DNA of 64,000 nucleotides, taken from positions 1 to 64,000 of IMG/VR virus record IMGVR_UViG_3300027816_000051. One strand, written 5' to 3'. Below are positions 2,520 through 14,365 of this stretch, one piece after another. Made by a program: the position numbers and the translations under genes. Every line of letters begins with the position of its first letter. Position 1 is the stretch's first letter. Below the pieces are notes generated by a model. It had not been told where the DNA came from and searched no databases. It saw nothing but the letters and a program-made list of their open reading frames with translations.

Positions 2520-2522
2520 ATT

Positions 2523-2724: not shown

Positions 2725-2725
2725 G

Positions 2726-2810
2726 TACCGAGGATGGGAGTCGAACCCACACGAACATTACTGTCCAAGGGATTTTAAGTCCCTCATGTCTACCATTCCA
2801 TCACCTCGGC
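2726..2810 (-). tRNA. tRNA-Leu(TAA)
   Basis: AGGGA CTTAAAA TCCCT; long variable arm. Confidence 0.95.
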
Positions 2811-2821
2811 ATTTACCAATT

Positions 2822-2840
2822 CCAATATGTCAAAGAACAA
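2822..2840 (-). promoter_or_regulatory. boxA-like antitermination element
   Basis: TTGTTCTTTGACATATTGG, identical to 5482-5500; resembles rrn boxA. Confidence 0.6.
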
Positions 2841-2871
2841 ATCTAATCAAAATATAAACAACAAAATCTTA

Positions 2872-2906
2872 AAAACAAAAAACCCGAACTTTTTTTGAGT
2901 TCGGGT
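2872..2906 (-). terminator. Intrinsic terminator of tRNA leader 1 (attenuator-like)
   Basis: ACCCGAACT-loop-AGTTCGGGT followed by T-rich tract. Confidence 0.8.
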
Positions 2907-2930
2907 CTTCTTATTAGTAGGTTAAGTTCC

Positions 2931-3035
2931 TTACACTTTTAAAAACTCCGAACATGGGTCACATAAATATATACCTCTCCCATTACCACTTAGTGGGTTG
3001 TTCAAGGGTTGTTGTATGTAAACCATTTTCATCAT
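2931..3035 (-). CDS. Putative leader peptide (34 aa, MMKMVYIQQPLNNPLSGNGRGIYLCDPCSEFLKV)
   Basis: Read by hand; lies between a consensus promoter and a terminator; its 3' end contains a strand complementary to the terminator 5' arm. Confidence 0.55.
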   Translation of the reverse strand: MMKMVYIQQPLNNPLSGNGRGIYLCDPCSEFLKV

Positions 3036-3052
3036 TTTGTTTATAACTATCA

Positions 3053-3083
3053 CAAAGATACAAAAAGTTTTTTAATTTCCAAG
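3053..3083 (-). promoter_or_regulatory. Bacteroidota sigma70-type promoter
   Basis: CTTG-N19-TATCTTTG. Confidence 0.8.
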
Positions 3084-3099
3084 TTTTTTTAAAAAAAAA

Positions 3100-3342
3100 T
3101 TAAAATAAATCTTCACACCATATTGGAGTCTTTTCACCAACGTAAGAACCGGAAACATTAAATTCAAAATATTCTACCGCTTCTGTCATATCCATTCCTT
3201 GATTCATAAGTATAGTGATACACTTCTCAACAGAATAGATTAATCTCATTGAAGATGTTTCAATTCCTATTACCGCATCATCAAATCCATCAGCAATTAA
3301 GATTTGTTCATCTTCGTATTGTTCTAAAATTTTTTCTAACAT
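3100..3342 (-). CDS. Hypothetical phage protein
   Basis: Start moved to MLEKIL (3342); ADGFDDAVIG...EYFEFNV..SYVGE.TPI is a protein-like pattern; upstream part of the track ORF is tRNA-Glu. Confidence 0.8.
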   Translation of the reverse strand: MLEKILEQYEDEQILIADGFDDAVIGIETSSMRLIYSVEKCITILMNQGMDMTEAVEYFEFNVSGSYVGEKTPIWCEDLF

Positions 3343-3370
3343 ATTGGTTTTTTTTAATTTAATTTCAGTG

Positions 3371-3442
3371 TAGCCCGACGGGGAATCGAACCCCGCTTTC
3401 ATCCGTGAAAGGGACGTGTCCTAACCGATAGACGACCGGGCC
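3371..3442 (-). tRNA. tRNA-Glu(TTC)
   Basis: CGTCC CTTTCAC GGATG anticodon arm. Confidence 0.93.
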
Positions 3443-3448
3443 AATTTG

Positions 3449-3536
3449 AGGAGAGTGAGGGATTCGAACCCCCGGAACCCTCACGAGTTCTCCTGATTTC
3501 AAGTCAGGTGCAATAAACCAACTCTACCAACTCTCC
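3449..3536 (-). tRNA. tRNA-Ser(TGA)
   Basis: CCTGA CTTGAAA TCAGG; long variable arm; discriminator U. Confidence 0.93.
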
Positions 3537-3540
3537 AATT

Positions 3541-3746
3541 ACCCCACCTGAGATTACGGTGAGTAGTCATTTCGGTTTATTTTCTTTCAAACAACCTGAA
3601 GGGCGTCCCCGTTAAAAAAAGTCAACACTACTGGGAGGAGGTGTGTCGCTCTCCTTTGTTCCCATGAAGTCCCACTCGCGCCGTAGACTTTCTGCGGAAT
3701 CATTCTTAAAGTCTTGATTCGAAGACTCTGAGTATCTCTTACTCAT
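3541..3746 (-). ncRNA. Candidate structured ncRNA (~205 nt)
   Basis: GC-richer non-coding spacer with hairpins TGAGTA/TACTCA, AGTCTT/AAGACT, GGAG/CTCC, AGTAGT/ACTACT, CTCACC/GGTGGG. Confidence 0.45.
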
Positions 3747-3748
3747 TG

Positions 3749-3820
3749 CGGTCCCACCGGGAATCGAACCCGGCACTTCGCCGTGACAGGGCGATATTAT
3801 AGCCGATTAACTATGAGACC
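3749..3820 (-). tRNA. tRNA-Asp(GTC)
   Basis: TCGCC CTGTCAC GGCGA; G73. Confidence 0.95.
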
Positions 3821-3826
3821 AATCGG

Positions 3827-3900
3827 AGCCTCCTGTCGGATTCGAACCAACGACCCGCTGATTACAAATCAGCTGCTCTGGCCAACTGAGCTAAGGAGGC
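3827..3900 (-). tRNA. tRNA-Thr(TGT)
   Basis: GCTGA TTTGTAA TCAGC. Confidence 0.95.
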
Positions 3901-3906
3901 AATAGT

Positions 3907-3990
3907 GGGTCAGAGTAGTCACGGCCACCTCTGTTCCTTCTGACCCTTGTCATAACCGTGGCAAGATGTGGCTCGACCCTAATTATGACC
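3907..3990 (-). ncRNA. Candidate two-hairpin RNA with loop-loop complementarity
   Basis: GTCATAA/TTATGAC and GGGTCAGA/TCTGACCC stems; loops carry GCCAC/GTGGC and CACGG/CCGTG complements. Confidence 0.5.
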
Positions 3991-3995
3991 ATTTG

Positions 3996-4067
3996 TTGCG
4001 GGGGTCGGATTCGAACCGACGACCTTTAGGTTATGAGCCTAACGAGCTACCACTGCTCTACCCCACG
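3996..4067 (-). tRNA. Initiator tRNA-fMet(CAT)
   Basis: C1:A72 mismatch (CGTGGGG/CCCCGCA); TTAGG CTCATAA CCTAA. Confidence 0.88.
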
Positions 4068-4068
4068 A

Positions 4069-4085
4069 TATATTTCAAAGAACAA
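4069..4085 (-). promoter_or_regulatory. boxA-like element (variant)
   Basis: TTGTTCTTTGAAATATA immediately 5' of tRNA-fMet. Confidence 0.5.
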
Positions 4086-4123
4086 ATAAAATATAAGAAG
4101 TAAATTCCATATTTCAAAATGTT

Positions 4124-4201
4124 TGGTTGCGGGACCCGGACTCGAACCGGGAACTTCAGCTTATGAGACTGACGAGATGACCACTTTCTACGCATCCCGC
4201 A
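4124..4201 (-). tRNA. Atypical tRNA(CAT), fMet-like with irregular D-arm
   Basis: TGCGGGA/TCCCGCA acceptor, TCAGT CTCATAA GCTGA, CCA encoded; about 3 extra nt before the D-stem. Confidence 0.7.
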
Positions 4202-4206
4202 ATGTT

Positions 4207-4283
4207 TGGTTGGAATAATAGGAATCGAACCTATAACCTTTCGCGTATCAGACGAATGCTCTAACCAATTGAGCTATATTCCA
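4207..4283 (-). tRNA. tRNA-Ile(GAT)
   Basis: TTCGT CTGATAC GCGAA; CCA encoded. Confidence 0.95.
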
Positions 4284-4286
4284 ATT

Positions 4287-4364
4287 TGGGGTAAATAATC
4301 GGATTCGAACCGACGACCTTCTGGACCACAATCAGACGTTCTAACCAACTGAACTATATCTACC
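4287..4364 (-). tRNA. tRNA-His(GTG)
   Basis: Loop TTGTGGT; encoded G-1 opposite C73; CCA encoded. Confidence 0.93.
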
Positions 4365-4372
4365 ATTTATAA

Positions 4373-4423
4373 ATTATAAGGTTCAAACCTTATAATGAAC
4401 CATTATAAGTCTCACACCTTATA
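4373..4423. repeat. Chain of overlapping short inverted repeats around TTATAA
   Basis: ATTATAAGGTTCAAACCTTATAATGAACCATTATAAGTCTCACACCTTATA. Confidence 0.6.
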
Positions 4424-4426
4424 TTG

Positions 4427-4500
4427 AGGTCCCGAGTGGATTCGAACCACCGAATAAGAGTTTTGCAGACTCCCCCCTTAAGCCACTTGGGTACAGGACC
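4427..4500 (-). tRNA. tRNA-Cys(GCA)
   Basis: GGAGT CTGCAAA ACTCT; U73. Confidence 0.93.
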
Positions 4501-4501
4501 G

Positions 4502-4576
4502 TGGTGATTCCTAAAGGACTCGAACCCTTACTTCAACGTCCGTAGCGTTGCGTGCTATCCATTACACCAAAGAACC
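4502..4576 (-). tRNA. tRNA-Arg(ACG)
   Basis: CAACG CTACGGA CGTTG; CCA encoded. Confidence 0.93.
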
Positions 4577-4577
4577 A

Positions 4578-5006
4578 TTACTTAATTCGTTCATCCCATT
4601 CTTCTTGGGTCCCCAATCTAATTGGAACGAACAATGCAAATCCATCATCATCTTCAAAATGGTTACAATCATCCTCTCTCCAACCAAACTTATATCTCAT
4701 GTGTATAAATTTGTTTGTCTCTTGATTCCATCTTGCGATTGTGGTATTTCTATGTTCACCAATATAAATTTGACCATTTACTAAATCTTTTTTAGGAATC
4801 GCACCTGCGTCAATTAGTTTCGGAACATAGAACTCTCTCCATTCTTTTTCATCCACTCTTGGAAGAGTTGGGACATCTTCGGGATTATTAATCTTTGGTA
4901 AATTCTCCCAATGATTCCTAATCATTCTTTCCCTCTCTTCTTTTAGTTTCATTTTCTCCGCTTCAAATTTCATTTTGACGGCGTTGATGTTATCATTTCT
5001 TTCCAT
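4578..5006 (-). CDS. Hypothetical protein
   Basis: Start moved to MERNDNI (5006); upstream part of the track ORF is tRNA-Trp/Val sequence. Confidence 0.8.
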   Translation of the reverse strand: MERNDNINAVKMKFEAEKMKLKEERERMIRNHWENLPKINNPEDVPTLPRVDEKEWREFYVPKLIDAGAIPKKDLVNGQIYIGEHRNTTIARWNQETNKFIHMRYKFGWREDDCNHFEDDDGFALFVPIRLGTQEEWDERIK

Positions 5007-5028
5007 GTCGTTTATTTTTAAAAGTTTG

Positions 5029-5099
5029 CACAGGTGGAGAGATTCGAACTCCCAACAACGGTTTTGGAGACCGGTATGATACCCTTTCACTACACCTGT
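5029..5099 (-). tRNA. tRNA-Trp(CCA)
   Basis: CGGT CTCCAAA ACCG anticodon arm. Confidence 0.93.
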
Positions 5100-5107
5100 G
5101 TATTGTG

Positions 5108-5180
5108 TAGTCCCTGTCGGATTCGAACCGACGACCCTCTGCATGTAAGGCAGACGCTCTCCCAACTGAGCTAAGGAACT
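5108..5180 (-). tRNA. tRNA-Val(TAC)
   Basis: TCTGC CTTACAT GCAGA. Confidence 0.95.
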
Positions 5181-5190
5181 ATGAAAGGAA

Positions 5191-5313
5191 AGAGGAAGAT
5201 GGTTCAGTGGACATCCTCTTTTACGATTGGCGTTACTTCAGGTGAATATCTGCAAACTCCGAATACATCATCCAATATTCACTCTCGAGATATTGATGTA
5301 TCATTCCCCAATC
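5191..5313 (-). ncRNA. Candidate pseudoknot/switch RNA
   Basis: GATTGG/CCAATC closing stem; crossing TACATCA/TGATGTA and GTGAATAT/ATATTCAC stems; trailing GAGGA/TCCTC hairpin. Confidence 0.5.
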
Positions 5314-5321
5314 AACCTTTG

Positions 5322-5395
5322 TGTCCCCGATGCGACTCGAACGCATAACCCCCACATTAAAAGTGTGGTGCTCTAACCAATTGAGCTACGAAGAC
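5322..5395 (-). tRNA. tRNA-Lys(TTT)
   Basis: CCACA CTTTTAA TGTGG. Confidence 0.95.
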
Positions 5396-5400
5396 AAATG

Positions 5401-5473
5401 TGGTACCGACAGGAATTGAACCTGTGACACCCAGATTTTCAGTCTGGTGCTCTACCAACTGAGCTACGGTACC
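5401..5473 (-). tRNA. tRNA-Phe(GAA)
   Basis: CCAGA CTGAAAA TCTGG. Confidence 0.95.
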
Positions 5474-5481
5474 ATTTTAAA

Positions 5482-5500
5482 CCAATATGTCAAAGAACAA
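5482..5500 (-). promoter_or_regulatory. boxA-like antitermination element
   Basis: TTGTTCTTTGACATATTGG, identical to 2822-2840. Confidence 0.6.
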
Positions 5501-5505
5501 CTTTG

Positions 5506-5575
5506 TGGACACTGTGGGAATCGAACCCAATCGTTCTGATTGCAAATCAGACGGTCTGCCGTTGACATCAGGCCC
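5506..5575 (-). tRNA. Atypical tRNA-Ala(TGC)
   Basis: TCTGA TTTGCAA TCAGA; G3:U70 present; bulged or mismatched acceptor stem; A at position 8. Confidence 0.75.
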
Positions 5576-5582
5576 ATAAAAC

Positions 5583-5610
5583 AAAAAAACCTCGAGATTT
5601 CTCCCGAGGT
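5583..5610 (-). terminator. Intrinsic terminator of tRNA leader 2 (attenuator-like)
   Basis: ACCTCGGGA-GAAA-TCTCGAGGT followed by a T run. Confidence 0.85.
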
Positions 5611-5638
5611 TCCTTTATATCGTTTTAAACTAAACAAC

Positions 5639-5728
5639 TTACAAGACACCTCGGGACATGCAAATATCAGCCACCTCCGCCCATTTTGAACAGATTGTAA
5701 ATGACATTGTATGTGTAAAGCGTCTCAT
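5639..5728 (-). CDS. Putative leader peptide (29 aa, MRRFTHTMSFTICSKWAEVADICMSRGVL)
   Basis: Read by hand; between promoter and terminator; contains TCCCGAGGT, a perfect 9-nt complement of the terminator 5' arm. Confidence 0.6.
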   Translation of the reverse strand: MRRFTHTMSFTICSKWAEVADICMSRGVL

Positions 5729-5758
5729 TGAAGTTTTATTTAATTTTAAAATCTTTTA

Positions 5759-5790
5759 CAAAGATAATAATAAGTATGCTGAAAAACAAG
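5759..5790 (-). promoter_or_regulatory. Bacteroidota sigma70-type promoter heading the tRNA array
   Basis: CTTG-N20-TATCTTTG. Confidence 0.8.
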
Positions 5791-5843
5791 AAAAGTTTGA
5801 AATTTTTTTAAAAAAATATATATAACAATCTCGATTGCCGAGG

Positions 5844-5851
5844 TATTTATA
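5844..5851 (+). promoter_or_regulatory. Putative phage late-promoter motif TATTTATA
   Basis: Same octamer precedes many structural genes on either strand. Confidence 0.6.
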
Positions 5852-5887
5852 GTAAACCAAATAAATAAACTAAACTAAATTACAACT

Positions 5888-6142
5888 ATGAACTTCAAAA
5901 AATGGATTATTGACCTTTTCAAAGATGAAAGAGGGTCAACTTCAATCAAACCGGTAATCGCCCTTTTAGGTGCATTATTCCTTTGCGGAACCATGATGGC
6001 AAATTCTTTTACACATGGTGACATTAAACCATCAGAAGAATTGGTAAACGCGGTGATGGTCATTACCGCTATTGGAATGGGTGCAGATACTTTAGATAAG
6101 TTCTCACATAAAAAGAAATCAGACGACGAAGTTTCTGAGTAA
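5888..6142 (+). CDS. Small 2-TM membrane protein (holin-like)
   Basis: Two hydrophobic segments and a charged C-terminus. Confidence 0.6.
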   Translation: MNFKKWIIDLFKDERGSTSIKPVIALLGALFLCGTMMANSFTHGDIKPSEELVNAVMVITAIGMGADTLDKFSHKKKSDDEVSE

Positions 6143-6147
6143 AAATT

Positions 6148-6172
6148 ATGGGGTTAGATAACCCCATTTTTT
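6148..6172 (+). terminator. Intrinsic terminator
   Basis: ATGGGGTT-AGAT-AACCCCAT plus T run. Confidence 0.7.
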
Positions 6173-6179
6173 CTTTTTT

Positions 6180-6677
6180 GTGATGAAGAGACTGCCCATC
6201 ATATTATTATTATTTCTAATATCATTTGGATTTTCGAATCTGAATGCCCAAACTATTGTTGTTGATACGGTAATCAATAACATTAAAATTGGTCCGTTCA
6301 CCGAAAATAAGAATTTGGCTTTCGGTGTTAAAAATATAATTGAAGAAATCATCAATGAACAGGATAGTTTAATTCTGATTACAGATAAAAATAAAGCAGA
6401 CTACAAAATTAAAGTTGAACTCATATTTTTTGACATTGTAACGACTAACTCGGGGGTTAGTATTTTTCACGAAGACAAAACAACCACCGTCATAAGAATG
6501 AAAGGTGTATTGTACAAAGGTGATAAAAAAATTAAACAGGAATTTTCGGAAGGTAAATCAACCGAAATTTCAACCTCAACCATAATGATTGATGAGGGTG
6601 GTAAATTCAATCAACAATCTGCTAGTTCGGCATTAAAGAAAACAACTCAAAACCTAATAAACAAACTAATACTATGA
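6180..6677 (+). CDS. Exported protein, probable CsgG/TolB-N-like fold
   Basis: Sec signal peptide; C-terminal G.S.....KFNQQSASSALKK parallels the CsgG-like protein at 9477. Confidence 0.6.
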   Translation: MMKRLPIILLLFLISFGFSNLNAQTIVVDTVINNIKIGPFTENKNLAFGVKNIIEEIINEQDSLILITDKNKADYKIKVELIFFDIVTTNSGVSIFHEDKTTTVIRMKGVLYKGDKKIKQEFSEGKSTEISTSTIMIDEGGKFNQQSASSALKKTTQNLINKLIL

Positions 6678-8590
6678 AAAAATTATTATTTATCCTAACC
6701 GCGTTAATTTTTACGACGACCGCGTTTTCTCAAACTACGCCACAGATTGGTAATCCTGTTGCGTATAAAACAATCAAAAGGGGTGACACCCTTGATGTTG
6801 TGTTTAAATACACACCAGCATCTTCTGTTGATGTTAGAACTTTCCAAGTTGATTTTCAATATAGAAAACAACTTTTCACTCACGTATCAACAACTGTCGA
6901 CCCAACTGTGAGTACTATGACACCAGCACTTTCGATTAAGTTCTTTAACAACTACAAATACTCAAGCTACAGTTCGGGAACTGGTTTGTACTCATATTCA
7001 ACGGATACAAATTACACTGTGGCAAGAAACTTTTTGGTTTTGTCAAGTGGTTCTCAAATCACCCAAGACACCTTTTTGATTCACAACAAATTTATCATCA
7101 ACGATGTTGAATCGAACTTCGACGCGGACAGTGTTGAAATAAACTGGGCTCGAATGTTCAAATATGACGGTACTACAATAGGTGATAACATTGCAATCTT
7201 AGATGTTCAAGACATGCATCTTGAACTTTTGGGTAACTTGGTTATCAGTGGTGTTGTTGAATTACCGCCAACAATGAAACTAAATGGTAGAAGACCAACA
7301 GTTATATGTACAAAATACAACACAGGTACATTTGTATCATCAGCACTTTGTGACACTGCGGGTTTCTACTCACTTAACAACGTAGATAAAAATACTAAGT
7401 ATAAATTACTTGTAAGATTCCCCGCGGATAGTATGGAAGTTTTCAGAGATTACGCAGTGACAATATCAGACGCGGTAAAAACATATGATGAATATACAGT
7501 AACTGATGTAAACCAAGGATTTGGTCAACAATATTTGAAAAATGGCTTGGCTTATCTAATAGGTGATATGAACCAAAACGGAAAGTTAGATGGTGGTGAC
7601 CCATACTTGATTTATGCAAACGTTAGTGGTATGAAAAAAATTGACACCACAACCATGATTAGAACATTCCACGCTGATGTTTATGATTCATTAGTGTTAG
7701 GTTCAACACAATGGAATGATTGGCCAAATCATTTAACCGCCACCAATTTTATTACTGATAGTGTTGGATTAACTAATAAGACAGTAAACATTAAGTACTT
7801 TATTCAAGGTGATGTTGACAGAACTTACTCATCGAGAGTATGGAACTCATCAGGTGTATTAGTAGCTAAGGCGGTGTTTAAAGGTAAATTAGATGTTGAG
7901 ATACCTAATACCGCATCATCAGGTAATCAACCAATATACGTACCATTTAATGTAAACACTAATGGTGATAATAATTATGGTCTACAGTTTGAAATGAAAT
8001 ATGATAAAAACAAGGTTAAATTTGAAGAAATCATATCTAATTTTAACGGAGGTCCATGGTTACAGTACGTTACACATGACGCAACTGCTGGTACAATTAG
8101 ATTTGGTGGTATGAATAACCAATTTAAAGATGGTTTAATTGGTCAAGCAACACCATTTAAATTAAAATTTTCACCTATTGGAAATAATGATATTGTGAGT
8201 AATATTTACGTTAGACAATTAATGGACGCATCCGATGAAAGAGGTGACCACTTGAATATTGACTTAGTTAGTAGTGTTGCTGTTATTATGTACAAAATGG
8301 CACCACCTATGAATCAAGACATTGATGAAATTACAGCATCAATTCGTCCAAACCCAACTGGTGGTTGGTTTGAATTAGAAGTAAAATTTCCCAACCCAAA
8401 CATGTCAATGAATGTTTCCATCTATGATAATAGAGGTCAACTAATTAAACAAGTTGGTTCTGTTACCACTAACTATATGGAAACAACTGCCTACAAACAA
8501 ATTGATATGAGTTCTGCATCATCAGGTAATTATTATCTGATTTTGAATAATTATAATAAACAATTAACAAGACAATTTATAAAAGTTTAA
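6674..8590 (+). CDS. T9SS type-A-sorted protein with cohesin-like and dockerin-like modules
   Basis: Signal peptide; GDMNQNGKLDGGDPYLI Ca-loop and later QGDVD; GLQFEMKYDKNKVKFEEI...IRFGG cohesin-like; C-terminal IRPNPT...IYDNRGQLI...GNYYLIL...QFIKV sorting domain. Confidence 0.8.
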   Translation: MKKLLFILTALIFTTTAFSQTTPQIGNPVAYKTIKRGDTLDVVFKYTPASSVDVRTFQVDFQYRKQLFTHVSTTVDPTVSTMTPALSIKFFNNYKYSSYSSGTGLYSYSTDTNYTVARNFLVLSSGSQITQDTFLIHNKFIINDVESNFDADSVEINWARMFKYDGTTIGDNIAILDVQDMHLELLGNLVISGVVELPPTMKLNGRRPTVICTKYNTGTFVSSALCDTAGFYSLNNVDKNTKYKLLVRFPADSMEVFRDYAVTISDAVKTYDEYTVTDVNQGFGQQYLKNGLAYLIGDMNQNGKLDGGDPYLIYANVSGMKKIDTTTMIRTFHADVYDSLVLGSTQWNDWPNHLTATNFITDSVGLTNKTVNIKYFIQGDVDRTYSSRVWNSSGVLVAKAVFKGKLDVEIPNTASSGNQPIYVPFNVNTNGDNNYGLQFEMKYDKNKVKFEEIISNFNGGPWLQYVTHDATAGTIRFGGMNNQFKDGLIGQATPFKLKFSPIGNNDIVSNIYVRQLMDASDERGDHLNIDLVSSVAVIMYKMAPPMNQDIDEITASIRPNPTGGWFELEVKFPNPNMSMNVSIYDNRGQLIKQVGSVTTNYMETTAYKQIDMSSASSGNYYLILNNYNKQLTRQFIKV

Positions 8591-8594
8591 AACT

Positions 8595-8933
8595 ATGAGC
8601 GACGAAACAAACGTACCAGAATCTGACGGAACATGGTCAGGCCTTAAGAAAACATTAATCGGAACTATTTCAACCGCAATTTTAGCTGGTGGTACATGGT
8701 TTACTACTACTCTTATGGGTGGTGGTGAAGAAAAAAATGAACCCACACCAACTCAACAATCGGCACCTGTTATTAATTTAAATGTAGATAATTCTTCTAA
8801 GAACACATCATCAAGTGGTGGGGGAAATACTACAATTATAAAAGAAAGAGTGGTTGAAAAACCATCCAAATCAGAACCTTCTAAACCTAAAAAAGAAGGT
8901 GATGAATTTAAAGAAAAAGAACCACAATGGTAA
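8595..8933 (+). CDS. Membrane-anchored low-complexity protein
   Basis: One N-terminal hydrophobic segment; Ser/Pro/Lys/Glu-rich tail. Confidence 0.75.
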   Translation: MSDETNVPESDGTWSGLKKTLIGTISTAILAGGTWFTTTLMGGGEEKNEPTPTQQSAPVINLNVDNSSKNTSSSGGGNTTIIKERVVEKPSKSEPSKPKKEGDEFKEKEPQW

Positions 8934-9475
8934 ATAATCAACCAACCGGATTTAAAGACCTTCTTAATTCAATGATGAAAAGAAGGTGGTTTATTACCGC
9001 GATTGTTTTAGGTGGATTTATGTTTATTATGGCTGGAATATTTGCCGCCATAATTGGTAAAAATGAAATAGGTGGAGAATGGAAAGAACTTCTTCTTTTA
9101 CTTCTTGGTGCTTTCATTGGTTCTTATGGTAAAATCATTGACTATTGGTTCAGTGATACCGATAAAGATAAAATGTTAGTACAAAAAATGGATGAGGAAG
9201 ATGGTACATCTTTGTCAAACACCGCCGATATGAAAACACCAATCAATCAAAGTTTAGATGAATCTACCCCTCAAGTCACTCCTCAAGTCACCCCCCAAGT
9301 TGGTGTGGAAATAGACGAAGATGGTGATGGTGTAATGGATGGTTTAGATTTTGATAATGATGGTATCATAGATGAATATTTTGAACATCGTCAATGTGAG
9401 CACGTTTGGGGCGACCAAGATAATGACGGTGATTTAGAATGTTTGAAATGTGGTAAGATTAAAGACCCTGAGTAA
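8927..9475 (+). CDS. 2-TM membrane protein with DxDxDG Ca-binding-like repeats and Cys/His motif
   Basis: Two TM segments; DEDGDG, DFDNDG, DQDNDG; CEH...CLKC. Confidence 0.75.
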   Translation: MVNNQPTGFKDLLNSMMKRRWFITAIVLGGFMFIMAGIFAAIIGKNEIGGEWKELLLLLLGAFIGSYGKIIDYWFSDTDKDKMLVQKMDEEDGTSLSNTADMKTPINQSLDESTPQVTPQVTPQVGVEIDEDGDGVMDGLDFDNDGIIDEYFEHRQCEHVWGDQDNDGDLECLKCGKIKDPE

Positions 9476-9476
9476 T

Positions 9477-10235
9477 ATGAAAAATTTCTTATTTAAGAAA
9501 ATTTTATCTCCAATTGTTTTAGTAATACTATGGTTTTTGGCGATGTTACTATTTGCTAATACGGTAAGTGCTCAAGTTGTGGGTAAGACACAAACAGAAC
9601 AATATAAAGCGTCTTTTGAAACAAATGTGTCTATAGATTCTCTTATGGATTATGATGGCCCTCAAATCCCAATACAAATTTTGAAAATTGGTATTAGTGA
9701 TGAGGTGTATGAACAATATCCCGAACTAAAAGAAAAAAAAGTTGGTTTGGGTGTTGCCAATATTACACTTGAATATTTGGAGAATTTAAATAGATTCACA
9801 TTTACCGAAGACAAAACTGAAATCAAAAATCGTATGGTGAAACAATACCAAGCATCTCAAGCCGGTATTAGTTATGACACATTAAATGGTAGAGGTAAGA
9901 TAAGATTGGCACATTATTTTGTGACAATTGAAGTTTATGAATTTTCAGTGAGTGAGGATGAAACCGTAAATCTTAGTAATGGTGTTAAAAATACCGTTGT
10001 AACTAGATTAGGTTTACAGGTTAGATTTACAGACGCAGAAACCGGTCAAATAATCGCCGCAAGTGGTTTAGGTGAAGCGGTAACAGTAAGAGAACTCAGT
10101 CTTTTGAATGATGATAATTTAAGTGAAGTGAAGTTTAATCAATCAACAATAGGTATTAGTACAAAAAAAGCATTAGATATTGCTTGTTCAAGAATTCTAT
10201 TAAGAATGATAAAAAAGGGTGTATTCCCAAAATAA
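9477..10235 (+). CDS. CsgG-family (curli assembly/transport-like) protein
   Basis: Signal peptide; GLGVANITLEYLENLNRFTFTE, VTIEVYEF, LGLQVRFTDAETGQIIAASG pattern typical of the CsgG/TolB-N family; start set at MKNFLFK. Confidence 0.7.
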   Translation: MKNFLFKKILSPIVLVILWFLAMLLFANTVSAQVVGKTQTEQYKASFETNVSIDSLMDYDGPQIPIQILKIGISDEVYEQYPELKEKKVGLGVANITLEYLENLNRFTFTEDKTEIKNRMVKQYQASQAGISYDTLNGRGKIRLAHYFVTIEVYEFSVSEDETVNLSNGVKNTVVTRLGLQVRFTDAETGQIIAASGLGEAVTVRELSLLNDDNLSEVKFNQSTIGISTKKALDIACSRILLRMIKKGVFPK

Positions 10236-10256
10236 CTTCATAATGTTTAAAAGTTA

Positions 10257-10284
10257 ATAAAAGGGGGGTTAAACCCCCTTTTTA
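10257..10284. terminator. Probable bidirectional terminator hairpin
   Basis: A-run, G-run/C-run hairpin, T-run. Confidence 0.6.
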
Positions 10285-10286
10285 AT

Positions 10287-12083
10287 ATGGTTATGAATTT
10301 TAAAACGTTAATATTAAGTTTTTTTCTTATTTTCGTATGTAACATATCGAAAGCACAGGTATCAACATATACCTTTATCGACCCTTGTACAAAAGAGGTA
10401 ACTATGTTTAGTGTACCAATACAGGGTGGTAAAACAATGATTATTTTTTTAGATAATGTTGGTTACTTTGATGCTAATGATTTGTCAAATGGTAATTTTT
10501 CAAATTGGGTAAATCAGGTTTACACAAAATACAGACAGACCAATCCCTGTTCACAACAACAAGGTCAGGTAATTCAAAATCAGATAACCGCACAAATAAT
10601 TGGAGGTACGATTCAGTCAGTTGTTAGTTCTATTTTGTCAAGCAGTCAATCACAATCAACAAGTTTAGAAAGTGGTTCGTCAAGTAGTGATGCTGGTGGA
10701 AAAGACAATAAAAATTCTGAAAAAAAGAAAAATAATAATTCATCCCAAACAAATGGAAATAATTCATCTCAATCAAATACAACGAGTACTACTTCAACTC
10801 AAACTGGAGGACAATCCCAAACGAATTCAGGAACTAATAACTCAAATGGAGGAAGTGGTTCAACATCAGGAAATGGGAATACAACGAATGGTGGAGGGAC
10901 ATCAGGTTCAGGTAACACAACTCAAGGTGGAAATTCAACGACTCAACCGTCTGTAGGAACAAACACGTCTACTAACAACAATTCAGGTTCAACCAATAGT
11001 GGTGGTTCTGGTGGTACTAACAATAGTTCGTCTAATAATACGAACACAACAACCGGTAACAATGGAACATCTACAAATACTTCGGGTGGTTCAACAACTA
11101 ATACAAACGGTTCGGCAACCACAAGTGGTAGTGGTGGTAGTAATACCAACAATTCAAATAGTGGAGGTTCTAATACAAACGGTTCTAATGGTAATACCAC
11201 AGGTGGTTCTACAAATGGTAATAGTGGGGGTTCTAATGGTGGTACCACTAGTGGTACAAATACAACAGGTGGAAGCGGTTCAAGTAATACTAATAACACC
11301 AACACAAATAATCAAAAGGGTGAGGAAGTTGGTGCCACAACACAAATGAATAATGATGCACACAATGATAATAATGCGGGTGGAGGTTCTAATAGTGGTG
11401 GTAAAGGTAAATCAGGGGGTAGTGGTAGTGCGAGGTCAAACCCTATAATAGTTTCTTCTGATATTACCTCAGCACAAAACTTGAATAGAACATTTACACC
11501 TATTGTTAATATAGGTACAAGTAAATCGTCAATGACGGGTTTATCAAGTTATGGTGTTACTGGTATGGTATGGTTAAACTTTAAACAGTTTGCTGTTTCG
11601 GCTAAATACACTAAAATACATTACAGTAAATCAAAAAAATTAAAATTCATACATAATTTAAATTTAACGGGTGTATATACTTACGGAAACTACTTGGGTT
11701 TTGTTGGTTATAGTGGGATTTTAAATGGTGGAAAATACGGTGTAACAGGTTTTAATATAAGTGGTGCAGCCACGATAATATCAGAAGAAAAAAGTGGTTA
11801 TTATTCACCATCAATTACCGCTTTTTATACAAGACCAATTAAGGTTAGTAAAAAAATGATAGTTAGTCCTGAATTATATGTTATTTCTACACCATTGGTT
11901 TATTCAACCAAAGACAAAGTATCAATAAGTGATAGATACGTGAGTGGGTTTATTGGGACGGGTATTGATTATCAAATATCAAAAAGATTTAAGTTAAATG
12001 TCAACTATAAAGCAAATATGAGTACAAATCCGGAATTTCCGATTTTGTCATTCTTTTTAATTGGTAGTAAGATAAATTTATGA
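10287..12083 (+). CDS. Exported protein with long S/T/N/G-rich linker and probable C-terminal beta-barrel
   Basis: Signal peptide; about 260 aa of low complexity; C-terminal alternating amphipathic strands ending GSKINL. Confidence 0.7.
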   Translation: MVMNFKTLILSFFLIFVCNISKAQVSTYTFIDPCTKEVTMFSVPIQGGKTMIIFLDNVGYFDANDLSNGNFSNWVNQVYTKYRQTNPCSQQQGQVIQNQITAQIIGGTIQSVVSSILSSSQSQSTSLESGSSSSDAGGKDNKNSEKKKNNNSSQTNGNNSSQSNTTSTTSTQTGGQSQTNSGTNNSNGGSGSTSGNGNTTNGGGTSGSGNTTQGGNSTTQPSVGTNTSTNNNSGSTNSGGSGGTNNSSSNNTNTTTGNNGTSTNTSGGSTTNTNGSATTSGSGGSNTNNSNSGGSNTNGSNGNTTGGSTNGNSGGSNGGTTSGTNTTGGSGSSNTNNTNTNNQKGEEVGATTQMNNDAHNDNNAGGGSNSGGKGKSGGSGSARSNPIIVSSDITSAQNLNRTFTPIVNIGTSKSSMTGLSSYGVTGMVWLNFKQFAVSAKYTKIHYSKSKKLKFIHNLNLTGVYTYGNYLGFVGYSGILNGGKYGVTGFNISGAATIISEEKSGYYSPSITAFYTRPIKVSKKMIVSPELYVISTPLVYSTKDKVSISDRYVSGFIGTGIDYQISKRFKLNVNYKANMSTNPEFPILSFFLIGSKINL

Positions 12084-14365
12084 GAAATGTACTATTTTTT
12101 ATATTGTTTTTGTTGTTACCTGTCTTAGCTTTTTCACAAGCAACAACAATGTCATTGGGTACAAGTAGTACGGGTGTGGTATCATCTACTTACAATACAT
12201 GGACCAAGGTTGACCCTAATTTAACAATTACAGCAAATGGGACAATAAATGGATTTAGAGTTCAAATATCTCAAACGTACACAAGTGGCGACCAATTGAG
12301 GTCAACATCAACTTTACCAACAGGTGTGAGTGCTTCTTTTAATACTACCACAGGTATATTAGTATTTTCGGGCACAGCAAGTGCAAGTGATTGGCAAACA
12401 GTATTGAGAGGTGTTGAATTTAAATCAACAACATCAACTTGTTACCCACTACAAAGGAGAGTCACATTTGTTGCTGGTTTAGTTTTTTACAACCCATTAA
12501 CTGAACATTTTTATGAATATGTTTCATCATCAGGTTCATGGACAACCGCAAAAACTAATTCTGAGTTAAGGTCTTATTTTGGTAGAGCCGGTTATTTAGC
12601 GACCATGTCTTCTGAAGCTGAAAATAATTTTATTTGGAAATTAATGTCATCAGATGGTTGGTTTGGGGCGTCGGATGAGATGAGTCAGGTTAATACCGCT
12701 AAGGGTTCTACCGTTTATACTTCACAAGCGGCGGTAGAACAAAAATGGCATTGGGTGTCAGGTCCTGAGAAGGGGACACAGTTTTCTAACGGTAGTACCG
12801 CGGTAACGGGTCAATACTCAAAATGGGCTGGTGGTGAACCAAATAATGCGGGTGGTGAACATTATGCACAATTTTATTCCGCGAACAGTGGACAATGGAA
12901 TGATTTACCTAACACTAACTTACCCGGTTATATTTGTGAATATGGAGACATGCCAAACGACCAAACATCAAGTATCACAATATTAACAAGGAATGTTGAA
13001 ATCAGTAACGCTTCAAGTGGTTACATAAGTGGTGGTAACATAAATGTTTGTTCGGGTAGTAACAGCACAACTTTAACGTTAAATGGGTATACAGGTAGTA
13101 TTGTTAGATGGGAATCTTCTTTTGATAACTTTTTTACCGCAGCAACCACAATATCGAGTACATCTTCAAGTATAACAGTAACCAACTTAACTAAAACCAC
13201 ATACTACAGAGCGGTAATAAATTCAACAAGTCCTGTGAGTTGTACAGGTTTAGTAACATCAAGTGTTTATCTGTCTGTAAAACCAACAAAATCAGGTTCA
13301 GTATTTGCGGTAAATAATAGTATATGTGCGGGAGGGCAATCCGAATTAACATTATCTGGTCAACAAGGTAATGTAAATAAATGGCAACGCTCAACTAATG
13401 GAACAACATGGACCGATATATCAAATACAACCACAAGTCTTACCGAAACAATTAGTAGCGCCGGAACTTATTATTATAGGGTAGAAGTTCAAACTCCAAA
13501 TTGTGGTAGTGCGGTCTTTTCTGATTCTAAAATAATCACAGTTACATCGGGAACACCTCCTGTTGGTGGTTCTATATCTTCATCAACACATACTTCTACA
13601 ACAAACTCAGGAACACTTACACTAAGTAGTTACACGGGTACAATTGTTAAATGGCAACGTTCAACAAATGATGGTGTAACATGGACTGACATTGTAAACA
13701 CATCGACAACTTATTCATACACAAATATAACCGTCAAAACATTGTTCAGAGCTCAATTACAAAGTGGTACTTGTGGTTTCGCTTATAGTTCATCAGGTTC
13801 TGTAACGATTATAACTGAAACAATAATCGGTACAATTACGATACCTACAGGTTTATCGGTAAGACCACAAGTAAAATTATATTTGGTTGAAAATGGTGTT
13901 GAGACACTGTTACAAACTGTCACGGTTGGTACAACAGGTACTTACACTTTAAACCCAACAAAATATAACTCAACTTATAAAATAGTTCCTTCGTTTTCAT
14001 CATCATTAACGTCCGCAGATTTTGATAATGTTTTTAATGAGTCACAAAACGAAAATACACCGAGTTTATTACAACCCGGTGTAGTATTGAATAATGGCCC
14101 GAAAATGAAAGCTGGCGATATTAATAAAGATGGTAAGGTAACAATATCGGATGCGTACTTATTAGGTGCTAATTTAACAAGTATGATAACATTTGATGAG
14201 GTTTATTGGTACACCGCGAATGATTTTAATTCGTTAACAATATCAAACTTCAATACAGTCACTCCATCAAATAATTTCTCAATAAATTTTACAAATACAT
14301 CAGTTACTTTTAACATCAAGTATATTGTAAAAGGAGATGCTAACTTATCTTCTTCGTCTTATTGA
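12080..14365 (+). CDS. C-type lectin / Ig-like repeat / dockerin-like adhesin
   Basis: Signal peptide; GYLAT..SEAENNFI..W.G.SD..W.W..G..Y.KWAGGEPNN..E....WND..YICEY C-type lectin; three ICxG..LTLxG..G....WQ repeats; GDINKDGKVTISDAYLL...KGDAN dockerin-like end. Confidence 0.85.
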   Translation: MRNVLFFILFLLLPVLAFSQATTMSLGTSSTGVVSSTYNTWTKVDPNLTITANGTINGFRVQISQTYTSGDQLRSTSTLPTGVSASFNTTTGILVFSGTASASDWQTVLRGVEFKSTTSTCYPLQRRVTFVAGLVFYNPLTEHFYEYVSSSGSWTTAKTNSELRSYFGRAGYLATMSSEAENNFIWKLMSSDGWFGASDEMSQVNTAKGSTVYTSQAAVEQKWHWVSGPEKGTQFSNGSTAVTGQYSKWAGGEPNNAGGEHYAQFYSANSGQWNDLPNTNLPGYICEYGDMPNDQTSSITILTRNVEISNASSGYISGGNINVCSGSNSTTLTLNGYTGSIVRWESSFDNFFTAATTISSTSSSITVTNLTKTTYYRAVINSTSPVSCTGLVTSSVYLSVKPTKSGSVFAVNNSICAGGQSELTLSGQQGNVNKWQRSTNGTTWTDISNTTTSLTETISSAGTYYYRVEVQTPNCGSAVFSDSKIITVTSGTPPVGGSISSSTHTSTTNSGTLTLSSYTGTIVKWQRSTNDGVTWTDIVNTSTTYSYTNITVKTLFRAQLQSGTCGFAYSSSGSVTIITETIIGTITIPTGLSVRPQVKLYLVENGVETLLQTVTVGTTGTYTLNPTKYNSTYKIVPSFSSSLTSADFDNVFNESQNENTPSLLQPGVVLNNGPKMKAGDINKDGKVTISDAYLLGANLTSMITFDEVYWYTANDFNSLTISNFNTVTPSNNFSINFTNTSVTFNIKYIVKGDANLSSSSY

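What the first reader, a model, noticed from the sequence alone, without database searches (positions are those of the whole stretch)
6674..8590. T9SS cargo encoded by a phage, with both cohesin-like and dockerin-like modules
Seen: signal peptide plus a typical type-A CTD (PNP...IYD..GQLI...G.Y.L...FIK). Known: such CTDs route proteins through the Bacteroidota T9SS and can lead to surface anchoring; cohesin-dockerin pairs assemble cellulosome-type complexes. Inference: a scaffoldin-like protein that may self-polymerise and hijacks the host secretion system.
Basis: partly seen in the sequence, partly recalled or inferred. Interest (0 to 1): 0.7.

Follow-up and report, generated by a model that had tools for sequence, protein, structure and literature searches.

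The report
Phage surface scaffold that docks a lectin
A giant phage of Bacteroidota encodes an exported protein with two cohesin domains, a half-degenerate dockerin-type module and a type IX secretion tag, next to a sugar-binding lectin with the same dockerin-type module, so the phage probably builds a small cellulosome-style adhesive complex on the infected cell.

Summary
ORF 6674-8590 (638 aa) lies in a 288 kb T4-like jumbo phage. It has a Bacteroidota-type signal peptide and a T9SS type A CTD that passes both curated cut-offs.

The predicted structure shows two cohesin folds, not one (residues 20-188 and 401-546, Z 15.0-15.6). Between them sits a 75-residue module with one canonical dockerin F-hand and one degenerate repeat. 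Pfam's dockerin model does not hit it. A profile of diverse relatives finds solved dockerins (E 3.3e-07), but only through the second repeat.

The only other protein in the genome with this module is a cassette neighbour (12080-14365), a real C-type lectin with invariant EPN/WND sites. In 80 related viral loci, every CTD-bearing scaffold is accompanied by a lectin-dockerin gene wherever the contig reaches both positions.

A complex prediction gives weak support for lectin-module-to-cohesin binding: ipSAE 0.53, best control 0.22.

The most likely function is a T9SS-exported scaffold that displays a phage lectin. Self-polymerisation was not tested. Distant relatives lack the CTD, so T9SS use is lineage-specific. 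Phage T9SS cargo has been reported before. A phage cohesin-dockerin-lectin system has not, as far as my searches reach.

The parts
6674..6730 (+). Sec (SPase I) signal peptide, residues 1-19. The predicted cleavage AFS|Q exposes Gln20, as in the Bacteroidetes Q-rule.
   Evidence: Read from the sequence. Q20 is invariant in 32 homologues. The Q-rule is described in PMC5837995.
6731..7237 (+). N-terminal cohesin-fold domain, residues 20-188.
   Evidence: AF2 pLDDT is 85-92. VIA-align gives Z 15.0 to 2vo8, 14.0 to 2jh2, and 12.7-12.8 to the type II cohesins 3ghp and 5k39. There is no Pfam hit.
7238..7423 (+). Small beta-sandwich, CarboxypepD_reg-like, residues 189-250.
   Evidence: pLDDT is 84-96. 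PF13620 hits 11 of 32 family members, best E 1.7e-4.
7424..7639 (+). Dockerin-type module, residues 251-322. The first repeat is degenerate (R258-D-x-A-V-T-I-S-D266 plus helix). The second F-hand is canonical (D298-M-N-Q-N-G-K-L-D-G-G-D309 plus helix).
   Evidence: There is one canonical loop per protein. Profile A4 finds PDB dockerins (8ajy_B at 3.3e-07, 4fl4_A, 3ul4_B, 1ohz_B) through positions 42-74 only. It is the most conserved domain in the family at 71% identity. The fold is not modelled confidently. Pfam PF00404 does not hit.
7640..7858 (+). Alpha/beta 'X' subdomain, residues 323-395, ending in the conserved IKYxxxGDV[DN]xSHSS motif.
   Evidence: pLDDT is 62-95. It always follows the dockerin-type module in relatives.
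7874..8311 (+). C-terminal cohesin-fold domain, residues 401-546.
   Evidence: Z 15.6, rmsd 2.2 A and 135 of 143 residues aligned to 6kgf_A, and Z 15.0 to 1aoh_A. Pfam Cohesin scores 16.9 bits, below threshold. It hits 20 of 32 relatives, best E 8e-06.
8342..8587 (+). T9SS type A C-terminal sorting domain, residues 557-638.
   Evidence: PF18962 scores 34.2 against a cut-off of 27, and TIGR04183 scores 27.6 against 23. Z 9.5 to the PorU CTD 6za2_B. It is the only PF18962 hit in the genome.
12080..14365 (+). Proposed partner, a 761 aa secreted protein. It has a signal peptide, a C-type lectin domain (residues 140-295, nt 12497-12964), Ig-like repeats, a small beta-sandwich, a dockerin-type module (residues 640-704, nt 13997-14191) and an X subdomain, and it ends at GDANLSSSSY.
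   Evidence: The module profile hits it at E 1.7e-08, and it is the only other hit among 1,303 ORFs. The lectin profile hits 123 distinct PDB sequences at E <= 0.01, best 3.8e-12, and EPN/E/WND are invariant. The complex prediction gives weak support.
5888..6142 (+). Cassette gene, 84 aa, one TM segment. It is 74% identical in the distant contig L005, where it sits next to an endolysin.
6180..6677 (+). Cassette gene, 165 aa, with a signal peptide (..NLNA|Q).
   Evidence: 45% identical in L005.
8595..9475 (+). Two cassette genes. The first is 112 aa. The second is 182 aa, with an N-terminal TM segment and an acidic C-terminal region carrying DxDxDG loops.
   Evidence: 39-55% and 73% identical in relatives.
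9477..10235 (+). Cassette gene, 252 aa counted from the internal Met, with a signal peptide. It is extremely conserved and possibly CsgG/HfaB-like (a lead only).
   Evidence: It is 85% identical in L005 and 57% in immuto. It has 5,953 homologues. Atlas gives 0.94 with CsgG clusters, and TM 0.56-0.63 through a relative's model. There is no Pfam or PDB sequence support.
10287..12083 (+). Cassette gene, 598 aa, with a signal peptide, a long S/T/G/N-rich low-complexity region, and a C-terminal domain that resembles outer-membrane beta-barrels (a lead only).

Best explanation
The gene encodes a surface scaffold that the phage makes its Bacteroidota host export.

Proposed route and action:
1. The Sec system takes the protein to the periplasm, and signal peptidase I cleaves before Gln20.
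2. The protein folds into a string of domains: cohesin, small beta-sandwich, dockerin-type module, X subdomain, cohesin.
3. The C-terminal type A CTD routes it through the host's type IX secretion system to the cell surface.
4. At least one cohesin, probably the N-terminal one, binds the dockerin-type module of the neighbouring gene's product, a Ca-dependent C-type lectin with an EPN sugar site.
5. The infected cell, or its debris and vesicles, then carries a phage-made glycan-binding complex.

Shown here: the signals, the two cohesin folds, one intact dockerin-type repeat, the real lectin, and the strict co-occurrence of scaffold and lectin.

Inferred: the cohesin-dockerin binding, surface anchoring as opposed to release, how the lectin crosses the outer membrane, and the biological purpose. 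The purpose could be adhesion or aggregation of infected cells, or masking of receptors against superinfection.
For: - **Export signals.** The CTD is above both curated cut-offs and its hallmark residues are invariant. The signal peptide has an invariant Gln20. All eight cassette genes start with a signal peptide or TM segment, and five have A/S|Q at the predicted cleavage site.
- **Cohesins.** There are two cohesin folds, at Z 15.0 and 15.6.
- **Dockerin-type module.** It is homologous to solved dockerins at E 3.3e-07, and it is the most conserved domain of the protein.
- **Partner.** The only other copy of the module in the genome is on the lectin gene of the same cassette, at E 1.7e-08. The lectin is genuine.
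- **Co-occurrence.** Among 80 viral loci, 34 carry a CTD-scaffold. In 32 of them a lectin-Doc gene is also found. The exceptions are 3 short contigs and 1 locus where the lectin gene is split into two ORFs.
- **Split version.** In Flavobacterium phage immuto, the lectin with the module, a 363 aa N-terminal part and a 243 aa cohesin-CTD protein are separate adjacent genes.
- **Complex prediction.** Median ipSAE 0.53 (runs 0.50, 0.53, 0.73). Controls scored 0.00 and 0.00 with the partner replaced, and 0.22 with the N-cohesin replaced. Partner pLDDT was 77-79, and the runs shared at least 42% of their contacts. The pass mark was reached by 58 of 80 solved complexes and 2 of 110 mismatched pairs in the tool's calibration, but the tool calls a pass at or below 0.60 weak.
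- **Host.** Contigs carrying the cassette were binned with Flavobacterium, Sediminibacterium and other Bacteroidota.
Against: - The complex verdict is only 'weak support', and it could reflect memorised cohesin-dockerin complexes.
- The first dockerin repeat is degenerate, and Pfam PF00404 never hits.
- The module's fold was not modelled with confidence in this protein (pLDDT below 50).
- The lectin has no CTD, so its route across the outer membrane is unexplained.
- Distant cassettes have no CTD at all yet keep the Doc-X-cohesin unit. The core function therefore does not need T9SS, and Doc-X-cohesin might be a rigid intramolecular unit.
- There are no expression, localisation or binding data.
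Confidence: 0.5

Rival explanations
1. Self-polymerising scaffoldin. The protein's own dockerin-type module binds a cohesin of another copy, which builds chains or a lattice on the cell surface.
For: Two cohesins and one dockerin-type module lie in one chain. In CTD-less relatives both cassette proteins carry Doc plus cohesin, which would allow reciprocal or chain-forming pairing. This idea does not exclude lectin docking.
Against: The full-length AF2 model gives no confident placement of the module. The orphan module on the lectin needs a free cohesin, and that fits a hetero-complex better.
Confidence: 0.2
2. There is no modular docking. Doc-X-cohesin is one rigid intramolecular unit, and the protein is simply an exported Ig-like stalk or adhesin, or a shield that masks phage receptors (superinfection exclusion).
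For: The dockerin-type module sits directly upstream of a cohesin in almost all relatives. The first repeat is degenerate. The protein evolves much faster than its neighbours (27% identity against 73-85% across the same pair of phages), as surface-exposed proteins do.
Against: The lectin and proteins such as P0141, P0142 and P0150 end right after Doc-X with no cohesin of their own, so the module can exist without a cis cohesin. The module is the most conserved part of the protein. The complex score stands well above the controls.
Confidence: 0.17
3. The cassette is part of the lysis or outer-membrane-disruption machinery, and this protein is an accessory envelope factor.
For: In the distant 173 kb contig L005, a PG_binding_1/GH19 endolysin sits inside the cassette, next to the homologue of the 84 aa TM protein. 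All cassette products are targeted to the envelope. Phage CsgG pores have been proposed to time lysis (PMC9004378).
Against: In this genome the endolysin homologue lies at 256.6 kb, outside the cassette and without membrane-protein neighbours. A lectin, two cohesins and a T9SS tag have no known role in lysis.
Confidence: 0.08
4. It is a virion decoration or fibre protein. The 'signal peptide' and 'CTD' would then be coincidental Ig-like features.
For: Ig-like and lectin domains are common on phage particles, and many BFVD matches are Big/FN3 virion proteins.
Against: The Q-rule signal peptide is conserved. The CTD passes the curated thresholds in all 32 members. There are no structural PHROG hits. 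The cassette is separated from the head genes by a block of genes on the minus strand. All the neighbours are envelope-targeted too.
Confidence: 0.05

Closest known systems
Phage-encoded T9SS cargo ('Cryophage', Bellas et al. 2020, PMC7468147)
   Same: A phage of a Bacteroidota host encodes proteins with type A T9SS sorting domains, presumed to use the host's secretion system.
   Different: The cargo there were an endoglucanase, a GH39 and a PA14 protein in hypervariable islands. Here the cargo is a non-enzymatic two-cohesin scaffold in a conserved eight-gene envelope cassette with a matching dockerin-tagged lectin.
Cellulosomal anchoring and adaptor scaffoldins (e.g. C. thermocellum CipA/OlpB, A. 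cellulolyticus ScaA/ScaB)
   Same: Cohesins and a dockerin lie in one polypeptide together with a cell-surface anchoring module. The predicted cohesin folds superpose on type I and type II cohesins at Z 12.7-15.6. The F-hand is homologous to solved dockerins.
   Different: The anchor is a T9SS CTD rather than SLH or sortase. The dockerin has only one intact repeat. No carbohydrate-active enzyme in the genome carries the module, and the one candidate passenger is a lectin. Sequence identity to cellulosomal cohesins is only 8-16%.
Non-cellulosomal cohesin/dockerin proteins (C. perfringens GH84C/GH33 cohesins 2vo8, 2jh2, 2w1n; Archaeoglobus fulgidus 2xdh)
   Same: Cohesin-dockerin pairs are used outside cellulose degradation to assemble secreted proteins. 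The N-terminal domain's best matches are the C. perfringens cohesins, at Z 15.0 and 14.0.
   Different: Those are cellular proteins that assemble glycoside hydrolases and toxins. This one is viral, tagged for T9SS and paired with a lectin.
Flavobacterium phage vB_FspM_immuto gp13-gp15 (MW353176)
   Same: The cassette is homologous. It holds a C-type lectin with the module (gp13), a 363 aa N-terminal part (gp14), a 243 aa signal peptide-cohesin-CTD protein annotated 'cohesin domain-containing protein' (gp15), and then homologues of the 112 aa, 261 aa and 598 aa genes.
   Different: The scaffold is split into two genes. Identity is only 28%. No function has been assigned in the record.
Phage-encoded CsgG/CsgF curli pores of pelagimyophages and Methylophilales phage Melnitz (PMC9004378)
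   Same: T4-like marine or freshwater myophages carry outer-membrane secretion-pore genes of unknown purpose. 'Sibling capture' and lysis timing have been proposed. The 261 aa neighbour here may be CsgG-like.
   Different: The CsgG assignment here is only a language-model and structure lead with no sequence support. Those phages infect Proteobacteria, and no cohesin, dockerin or lectin partners are reported for them.

Membership tests
T9SS type A cargo (TIGR04183 / PF18962 CTD) | The C-terminal domain matches the family HMM above the curated cut-off | tested here: met
   PF18962 scores 34.2 against 27, and TIGR04183 scores 27.6 against 23. All 32 relatives hit.
T9SS type A cargo (TIGR04183 / PF18962 CTD) | The domain lies at the extreme C terminus and has the Ig-like beta-sandwich fold | tested here: met
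   It spans residues 557-638 of 638, with pLDDT 81-91 and Z 9.5 to the PorU CTD 6za2_B.
T9SS type A cargo (TIGR04183 / PF18962 CTD) | An N-terminal Sec signal peptide, needed for the periplasmic intermediate | tested here: met
   Read from the sequence, with an invariant Q20 that fits the Bacteroidetes Q-rule. No dedicated signal-peptide predictor was available.
T9SS type A cargo (TIGR04183 / PF18962 CTD) | T9SS-dependent secretion, and CTD removal by PorU, in a host that has a T9SS | not testable with these tools
   The host is unknown. Bacteroidota is inferred from the CTD, the Q-rule, the nearest cultured phage and MAG binning.
Cohesin (PF00963) | A match to the Pfam model above the gathering score | tested here: not met
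   The C-terminal domain scores 15.5-16.9 bits against 24.1. The N-terminal domain has no hit. The model hits 20 of 32 close relatives and 14 of 34 distant ones, best E 2.5e-08.
Cohesin (PF00963) | The nine-stranded jelly-roll beta-sandwich of cohesin modules | tested here: met
   Residues 401-546 give Z 15.6 and rmsd 2.2 A over 135 of 143 residues of 6kgf_A. Residues 20-188 give Z 15.0 over 134 of 135 residues of 2vo8. Both rest on predicted models.
Cohesin (PF00963) | Binds a dockerin | tested here: inconclusive
   ipSAE is 0.53 against a best control of 0.22, and the tool's verdict is 'weak support'.
Dockerin (PF00404) | A match to the Pfam model | tested here: not met
   There is no hit in this protein or in 65 relatives, even at a permissive E-value.
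Dockerin (PF00404) | A tandem duplication of a ~22-residue F-hand, each with a 12-residue Ca loop (ligands at positions 1, 3, 5, 9, 12) followed by a helix | tested here: not met
   There is exactly one canonical loop (D298, N300, N302, D306, D309). The first repeat keeps only positions 5, 9 and 12 (D259, T263, D266) plus the helix.
Dockerin (PF00404) | Detectable homology to dockerins of solved structure | tested here: met
   Profile A4 finds 8ajy_B at 3.3e-07, 4fl4_A at 6.3e-05, 3ul4_B at 1e-04 and 1ohz_B at 6e-03. About 25 of the 31 hits are dockerins. All match only through the second repeat.
Dockerin (PF00404) | The three-helix dockerin fold | tested here: inconclusive
   AF2 places helices at 264-275, 292-297 and 310-317, but pLDDT is below 50. 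The isolated region gives pLDDT 47. The lectin's copy reached pLDDT 77-79 in the complex run.
Cellulosome scaffoldin | Dockerin-bearing carbohydrate-active enzymes as passengers | tested here: not met
   The module profile finds only this protein and the lectin among all 1,303 ORFs of the genome.
C-type lectin domain (neighbour 12080-14365) | CTLD homology with an intact EPN...E...WND Ca/sugar site | tested here: met
   Profile A9 hits 123 distinct PDB sequences at E <= 0.01, the listed ones almost all C-type lectins, best 3.8e-12. EPN, E121 and WND are invariant in 22 sequences. Pfam Lectin_C scores 18.6 against 22.6 for the single sequence.
CsgG/HfaB (neighbour 9477-10235) | A sequence or profile match to CsgG | tested here: not met
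   There is no Pfam hit, and the profile finds no CsgG chain in the PDB. The only support is an Atlas lead (0.94; TM 0.56-0.63 through a relative's model).

The most novel reading that the evidence does not exclude
A widespread group of T4-like phages of Bacteroidota carries a self-contained kit for remodelling the cell surface. The kit holds a cohesin scaffold (T9SS-anchored in this lineage), a dockerin-tagged C-type lectin as passenger, and its own outer-membrane export components (a CsgG-like pore and an OMP-like protein). With it, infected cells would display a phage-made glycan-binding complex, for example to clump with uninfected hosts or stick to particles before lysis, or to block superinfection. 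This would be the first viral cohesin-dockerin assembly system.
Probability: 0.25. Interest if true: 0.85.

Novelty: new variant of a known kind. Interest (0 to 1): 0.66.

Why it matters
Cohesin-dockerin pairing is the textbook way bacteria assemble cellulosomes, and it is widely used in protein engineering. A viral version that a type IX secretion tag places on the host surface, and that carries a lectin instead of enzymes, would extend the principle to virus-host biology.

It would also give a concrete, testable example of a lytic phage re-decorating its host's surface.

The cassette is common. The conserved neighbour gene has about 6,000 homologues in metagenomes, and a cultured relative exists (Flavobacterium phage immuto on Flavobacterium sp. 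LMO8), so the idea can be tested directly.

It may also help explain why large aquatic myophages carry outer-membrane pore genes, which is still an open question.

Tried and rejected
- **Pfam, NCBIfam and PHROGs on the whole protein and on separate domains.** No dockerin hit, cohesin below threshold, no structural PHROG.
- **Close-family profile of residues 246-400 against the PDB.** Nothing at E <= 10. The alignment was too narrow. Dockerins were found only after distant relatives were added.
- **AF2 of the middle region alone.** pLDDT 47, unusable.
- **'Generic dockerin' reading.** The exhaustive profile search of the middle region found only 40 representative clusters among 1.84 billion proteins. 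The module is therefore a rare, specialised variant and not a member of the broad dockerin population, so I rejected this reading.
- **The 182 aa neighbour's DxDxDG loops as a second dockerin.** The module profile gives E 8.6, so I rejected it.
- **Similarity between the 165 aa and 261 aa neighbours.** Not significant.
- **CsgG assignment of the 261 aa neighbour by PDB profile.** No CsgG hit, so it stays a lead.
- **The 116 aa CTD ORF downstream of CTD-less scaffolds as a frameshifted or split gene.** Rejected. It has its own lipoprotein signal peptide and its own start codon.
- **A bacterial origin of the scaffold.** No close relative in 185,579 GTDB species genomes with the patterns used. 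A first attempt with alignment A5 failed because it had no conserved stretch to search with.
- **Lysis-cassette idea.** The endolysin lies elsewhere in this genome and has no membrane-protein neighbours.
- **Sigma-70 promoter scan of the cassette.** No enrichment: 35 sites against 41.4 expected.
Full report
**1. The observation**

An ORF of 638 codons occupies 6674-8590 on the + strand, as stated. Its first 19 residues, MKKLLFILTALIFTTTAFS, have a basic n-region and a hydrophobic core. Gln20 follows and is invariant in 32 homologues that are 53-77% identical. This fits the Bacteroidetes 'Q-rule' for signal peptidase I substrates (PMC5837995), which has also been noted in phage proteins (PMC10367356).

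The last ~80 residues match the T9SS type A sorting domain above both curated cut-offs. PF18962 scores 34.2 against 27, and TIGR04183 scores 27.6 against 23. All 32 relatives match as well.

The window is a phage. It holds a large terminase, a portal and a T4-like major head protein and 23 tRNA genes. It belongs to a 288,260 bp virus record that CheckV rates 92% complete. The nearest cultured relatives by capsid protein include the Flavobacterium immuto phages at 41% identity. This is the only PF18962 hit in the genome.

**2. Anatomy**

An AlphaFold2 model built from a 32-sequence alignment has mean pLDDT 75. It resolves five well-modelled parts and one poorly modelled part. A second-look structural alignment gives the ranges.

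| Residues | Assignment | Evidence |
|---|---|---|
| 20-188 | Cohesin fold | Z 15.0 to 2vo8, 14.0 to 2jh2, 12.7-12.8 to type II cohesins |
| 189-250 | Small beta-sandwich | Recognised as CarboxypepD_reg in 11 of 32 relatives |
| 251-322 | Dockerin-type module | Helical, pLDDT below 50 (see section 3) |
| 323-395 | Alpha/beta 'X' subdomain | pLDDT 62-95 |
| 401-546 | Cohesin fold | Z 15.6, rmsd 2.2 A over 135 of 143 residues of CaCohA2 (6kgf_A) |
| 549-638 | CTD | Z 9.5 to the CTD of PorU (6za2_B) |

The protein therefore has two cohesin-fold domains, not one. By sequence alone Pfam Cohesin stays below threshold in this copy (15.5-16.9 bits against 24.1). It does hit 20 of 32 close relatives and 14 of 34 distant ones.

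**3. The dockerin question**

Pfam's dockerin model never hits. A profile of the close family found nothing in the PDB. The isolated region folded poorly, at pLDDT 47.

Each family member has exactly one canonical 12-residue EF-hand-type loop. In this protein it is D298-M-N-Q-N-G-K-L-D-G-G-D309, followed by a helix.

An exhaustive profile search of 1.84 billion representative proteins found only 40 matches. Most are 550-700 aa with the same layout. In these distant relatives the second segment reads like a textbook dockerin repeat, for example ADVNLDGQFNEADCYLLLANLTG. The first segment keeps only the back half of a loop (positions 5, 9 and 12) and its helix.

A 76-residue profile from these diverse sequences hits solved dockerins: ScaH dockerin 8ajy_B at E 3.3e-07, 4fl4_A at 6.3e-05, 3ul4_B at 1e-04 and 1ohz_B at 6e-03. 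About 25 of the 31 hits are dockerins. Every match runs through profile positions ~42-74, which is the second repeat.

My reading is that this is a real but atypical dockerin-type module with one intact F-hand. It fails the family's defining tandem duplication. Within the family it is the most conserved part of the protein, at 71% mean pairwise identity against 53% for the CTD.

**4. Context changes the interpretation**

The gene lies in a + strand block of eight genes (5888-14365). Every product starts with a signal peptide or a TM segment, and five have A/S|Q at the predicted cleavage site. The block is syntenic in a 318 kb relative. It can also be recognised in a 173 kb phage contig (L005) and in the cultured Flavobacterium phage immuto.

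Between the window and L005 the neighbours are 73-85% identical, while this protein is only 27% identical. It is therefore the fast-evolving member of a conserved cassette.

I built HMMs for each domain and searched all 1,303 ORFs of at least 40 aa in the 288 kb genome. The cohesin and CTD profiles hit only this protein. The dockerin-type profile hit one more, the 761 aa product of 12080-14365, at residues 640-704 (E 1.7e-08).

That protein has a signal peptide, a C-type lectin domain, Ig-like repeats, a small beta-sandwich, the module (second repeat GDINKDGKVTISDAYLLGANLTS) and the X subdomain. It ends at GDANLSSSSY, which is exactly where the second cohesin begins in the 638 aa protein.

A profile of the lectin domain from 22 phage sequences hits 123 distinct PDB sequences at E <= 0.01. 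The listed ones are almost all animal C-type lectin domains (CEL-I at 3.8e-12, then langerin, mannose-binding protein and DC-SIGN). The EPN...E...WND Ca/sugar site is invariant.

**5. Comparative test**

I fetched 80 viral loci through the conserved 261 aa neighbour and scanned them with the same profiles.

- Thirty-four loci carry an Ncoh-Doc-Ccoh-CTD scaffold. In 32 of them a lectin-Doc protein without a cohesin is also present. The exceptions are three short contigs and one locus where the lectin gene is split into two ORFs.
- A second group pairs (Ncoh)-Doc-Ccoh with lectin-Doc-Ccoh and has no CTD.
- A third group has Ncoh-Doc-Ccoh followed by an independent 116 aa lipoprotein made of a CTD-like domain.
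- In immuto the parts are separate adjacent genes. These are the lectin with the module (E 5e-05), a 363 aa N-terminal part, and a 243 aa signal peptide-cohesin-CTD protein. All were recovered by fold search too.

The cohesin and dockerin-type modules thus travel together with a lectin across distant phages, fused or split, and the CTD is optional.

No close relative of the scaffold was found in 185,579 species-representative cellular genomes with the patterns used. Contigs carrying the cassette were mostly binned with Flavobacterium, Sediminibacterium or other Bacteroidota.

**6. Binding test**

The one complex job folded the N-cohesin, the C-cohesin, the lectin's Doc-X and two Ca2+ ions.

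- The median ipSAE was 0.53 (runs 0.50, 0.53 and 0.73).
- Two unrelated partners scored 0.00.
- Replacing the N-cohesin dropped the score to 0.22.
- Partner pLDDT was 77-79, and the runs shared at least 42% of their contacts.
- In the tool's calibration the pass mark was reached by 58 of 80 solved complexes and 2 of 110 mismatched pairs. The tool rates a pass at or below 0.60 as weak support, and the score may reflect memorised cohesin-dockerin complexes.

The drop on removing the N-cohesin suggests that this is the preferred site. The protein's own module against its own cohesins could not be tested.

**7. Most likely mechanism**

Supported by sequence signals and predicted folds:
- Sec export and cleavage before Gln20.
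- Folding into a cohesin / beta-sandwich / Doc-X / cohesin string.
- A T9SS type A tag.

Inferred:
- Transport through the host T9SS and retention on, or release from, the surface.
- Ca-dependent docking of the lectin's module on a cohesin.
- A biological role in adhesion or aggregation of infected cells, or in receptor masking.

Open problems:
- The lectin has no CTD, so its path across the outer membrane is unknown. The cassette's possibly CsgG-like and OMP-like proteins are candidates, but both are leads only.
- CTD-less cassettes show that T9SS is not essential to the core function.

Rivals are listed separately: self-polymerisation, a rigid non-docking unit, a lysis accessory, and a virion protein.

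**8. Comparison with what is known, and novelty**

Phage-encoded T9SS cargo has been reported once that I could find ('Cryophage', PMC7468147). Phage proteins that follow the Q-rule have been noted (PMC10367356). The immuto record already carries the label 'cohesin domain-containing protein', and UniProt has an uncultured-phage protein auto-named for its sorting domain. Phage CsgG pores are known in pelagimyophages (PMC9004378).

My full-text searches found no description of a viral cohesin-dockerin system or of its pairing with a C-type lectin. That is a limited search and not proof of absence.

I rate this as a new variant of known kinds (non-cellulosomal cohesin-dockerin assembly, and phage T9SS cargo), with moderate to high interest.

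Noticed in passing
window 9450-10235 (probable start at 9477): A secreted protein of about 252 aa that is extraordinarily conserved. It is 85% identical between phages whose scaffold proteins share only 27%, and it has 5,953 homologues. It has no Pfam family. A language-model and structure search points to the CsgG/HfaB outer-membrane pore family, but sequence profiles do not confirm this.
   Followed up: partly
window 10287-12083: A 598 aa secreted protein with a low-complexity tract of roughly 270 residues rich in S/T/G/N, and a C-terminal ~210-residue domain that resembles outer-membrane beta-barrels (Atlas lead, 0.93-0.95). The C-terminal part is 40% identical in L005.
   Followed up: partly
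window 8927-9475: A 182 aa membrane-anchored protein whose C-terminal part has back-to-back DxDxDG Ca-loop-like motifs (DEDGDGVMDGLDFDNDGIIDEY, GDQDNDGD) and a Cys-rich tail. It is 73% identical in L005. My dockerin-type profile does not recognise it (E 8.6).
   Followed up: partly
L065 8583-8933, L077 9077-9427, L078, L079 8649-8999: In relatives whose scaffold lacks a CTD, the next gene is an independent 116 aa lipoprotein (lipobox ...C) that consists of little more than a T9SS CTD-like beta-sandwich. Its start codon overlaps or abuts the scaffold's stop codon.
   Followed up: partly
window 573-5473, minus strand: A block of 23 tRNA genes, including three tRNA-Met(CAT)-type genes and a tRNA-Ile(TAT), immediately upstream of the cassette.
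   Followed up: no
window 14787-16709, minus strand: A possible RNA-repair trio. It comprises a cREC_REC cyclic-phosphate-processing receiver domain (E 1.4e-22), a T4-type RNA ligase 1 (E 8.5e-15), and a 137 aa gene whose homologue in L003 carries AAA_33. It may act as tRNA repair against host anticodon nucleases.
   Followed up: no
window 16902-18920, minus strand: A 672 aa ATP-dependent (Lon-like) protease encoded by the phage (phrog_4871, E 1.3e-244).
   Followed up: no
L005 10417-11256; G000 256580-257401 (L007 1501-2328): A PG_binding_1/GH19 endolysin lies inside the cassette in the 173 kb relative. In this genome its 70%-identical homologue is about 38 kb away across the record ends and has no membrane-protein neighbours.
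   Followed up: partly
L010 8712-10924: In one relative the lectin gene is split into a 618 aa lectin ORF and a 119 aa ORF that carries the dockerin-type module. This is either a frameshift or a sequencing error.
   Followed up: no
window 5400-15000: Terminator-like hairpins are over-represented: 17 found against 5.0 +/- 2.2 in shuffles. Examples lie at 6148-6167 after the 84 aa gene and at 10259-10282 between the 261 aa and 598 aa genes.
   Followed up: no
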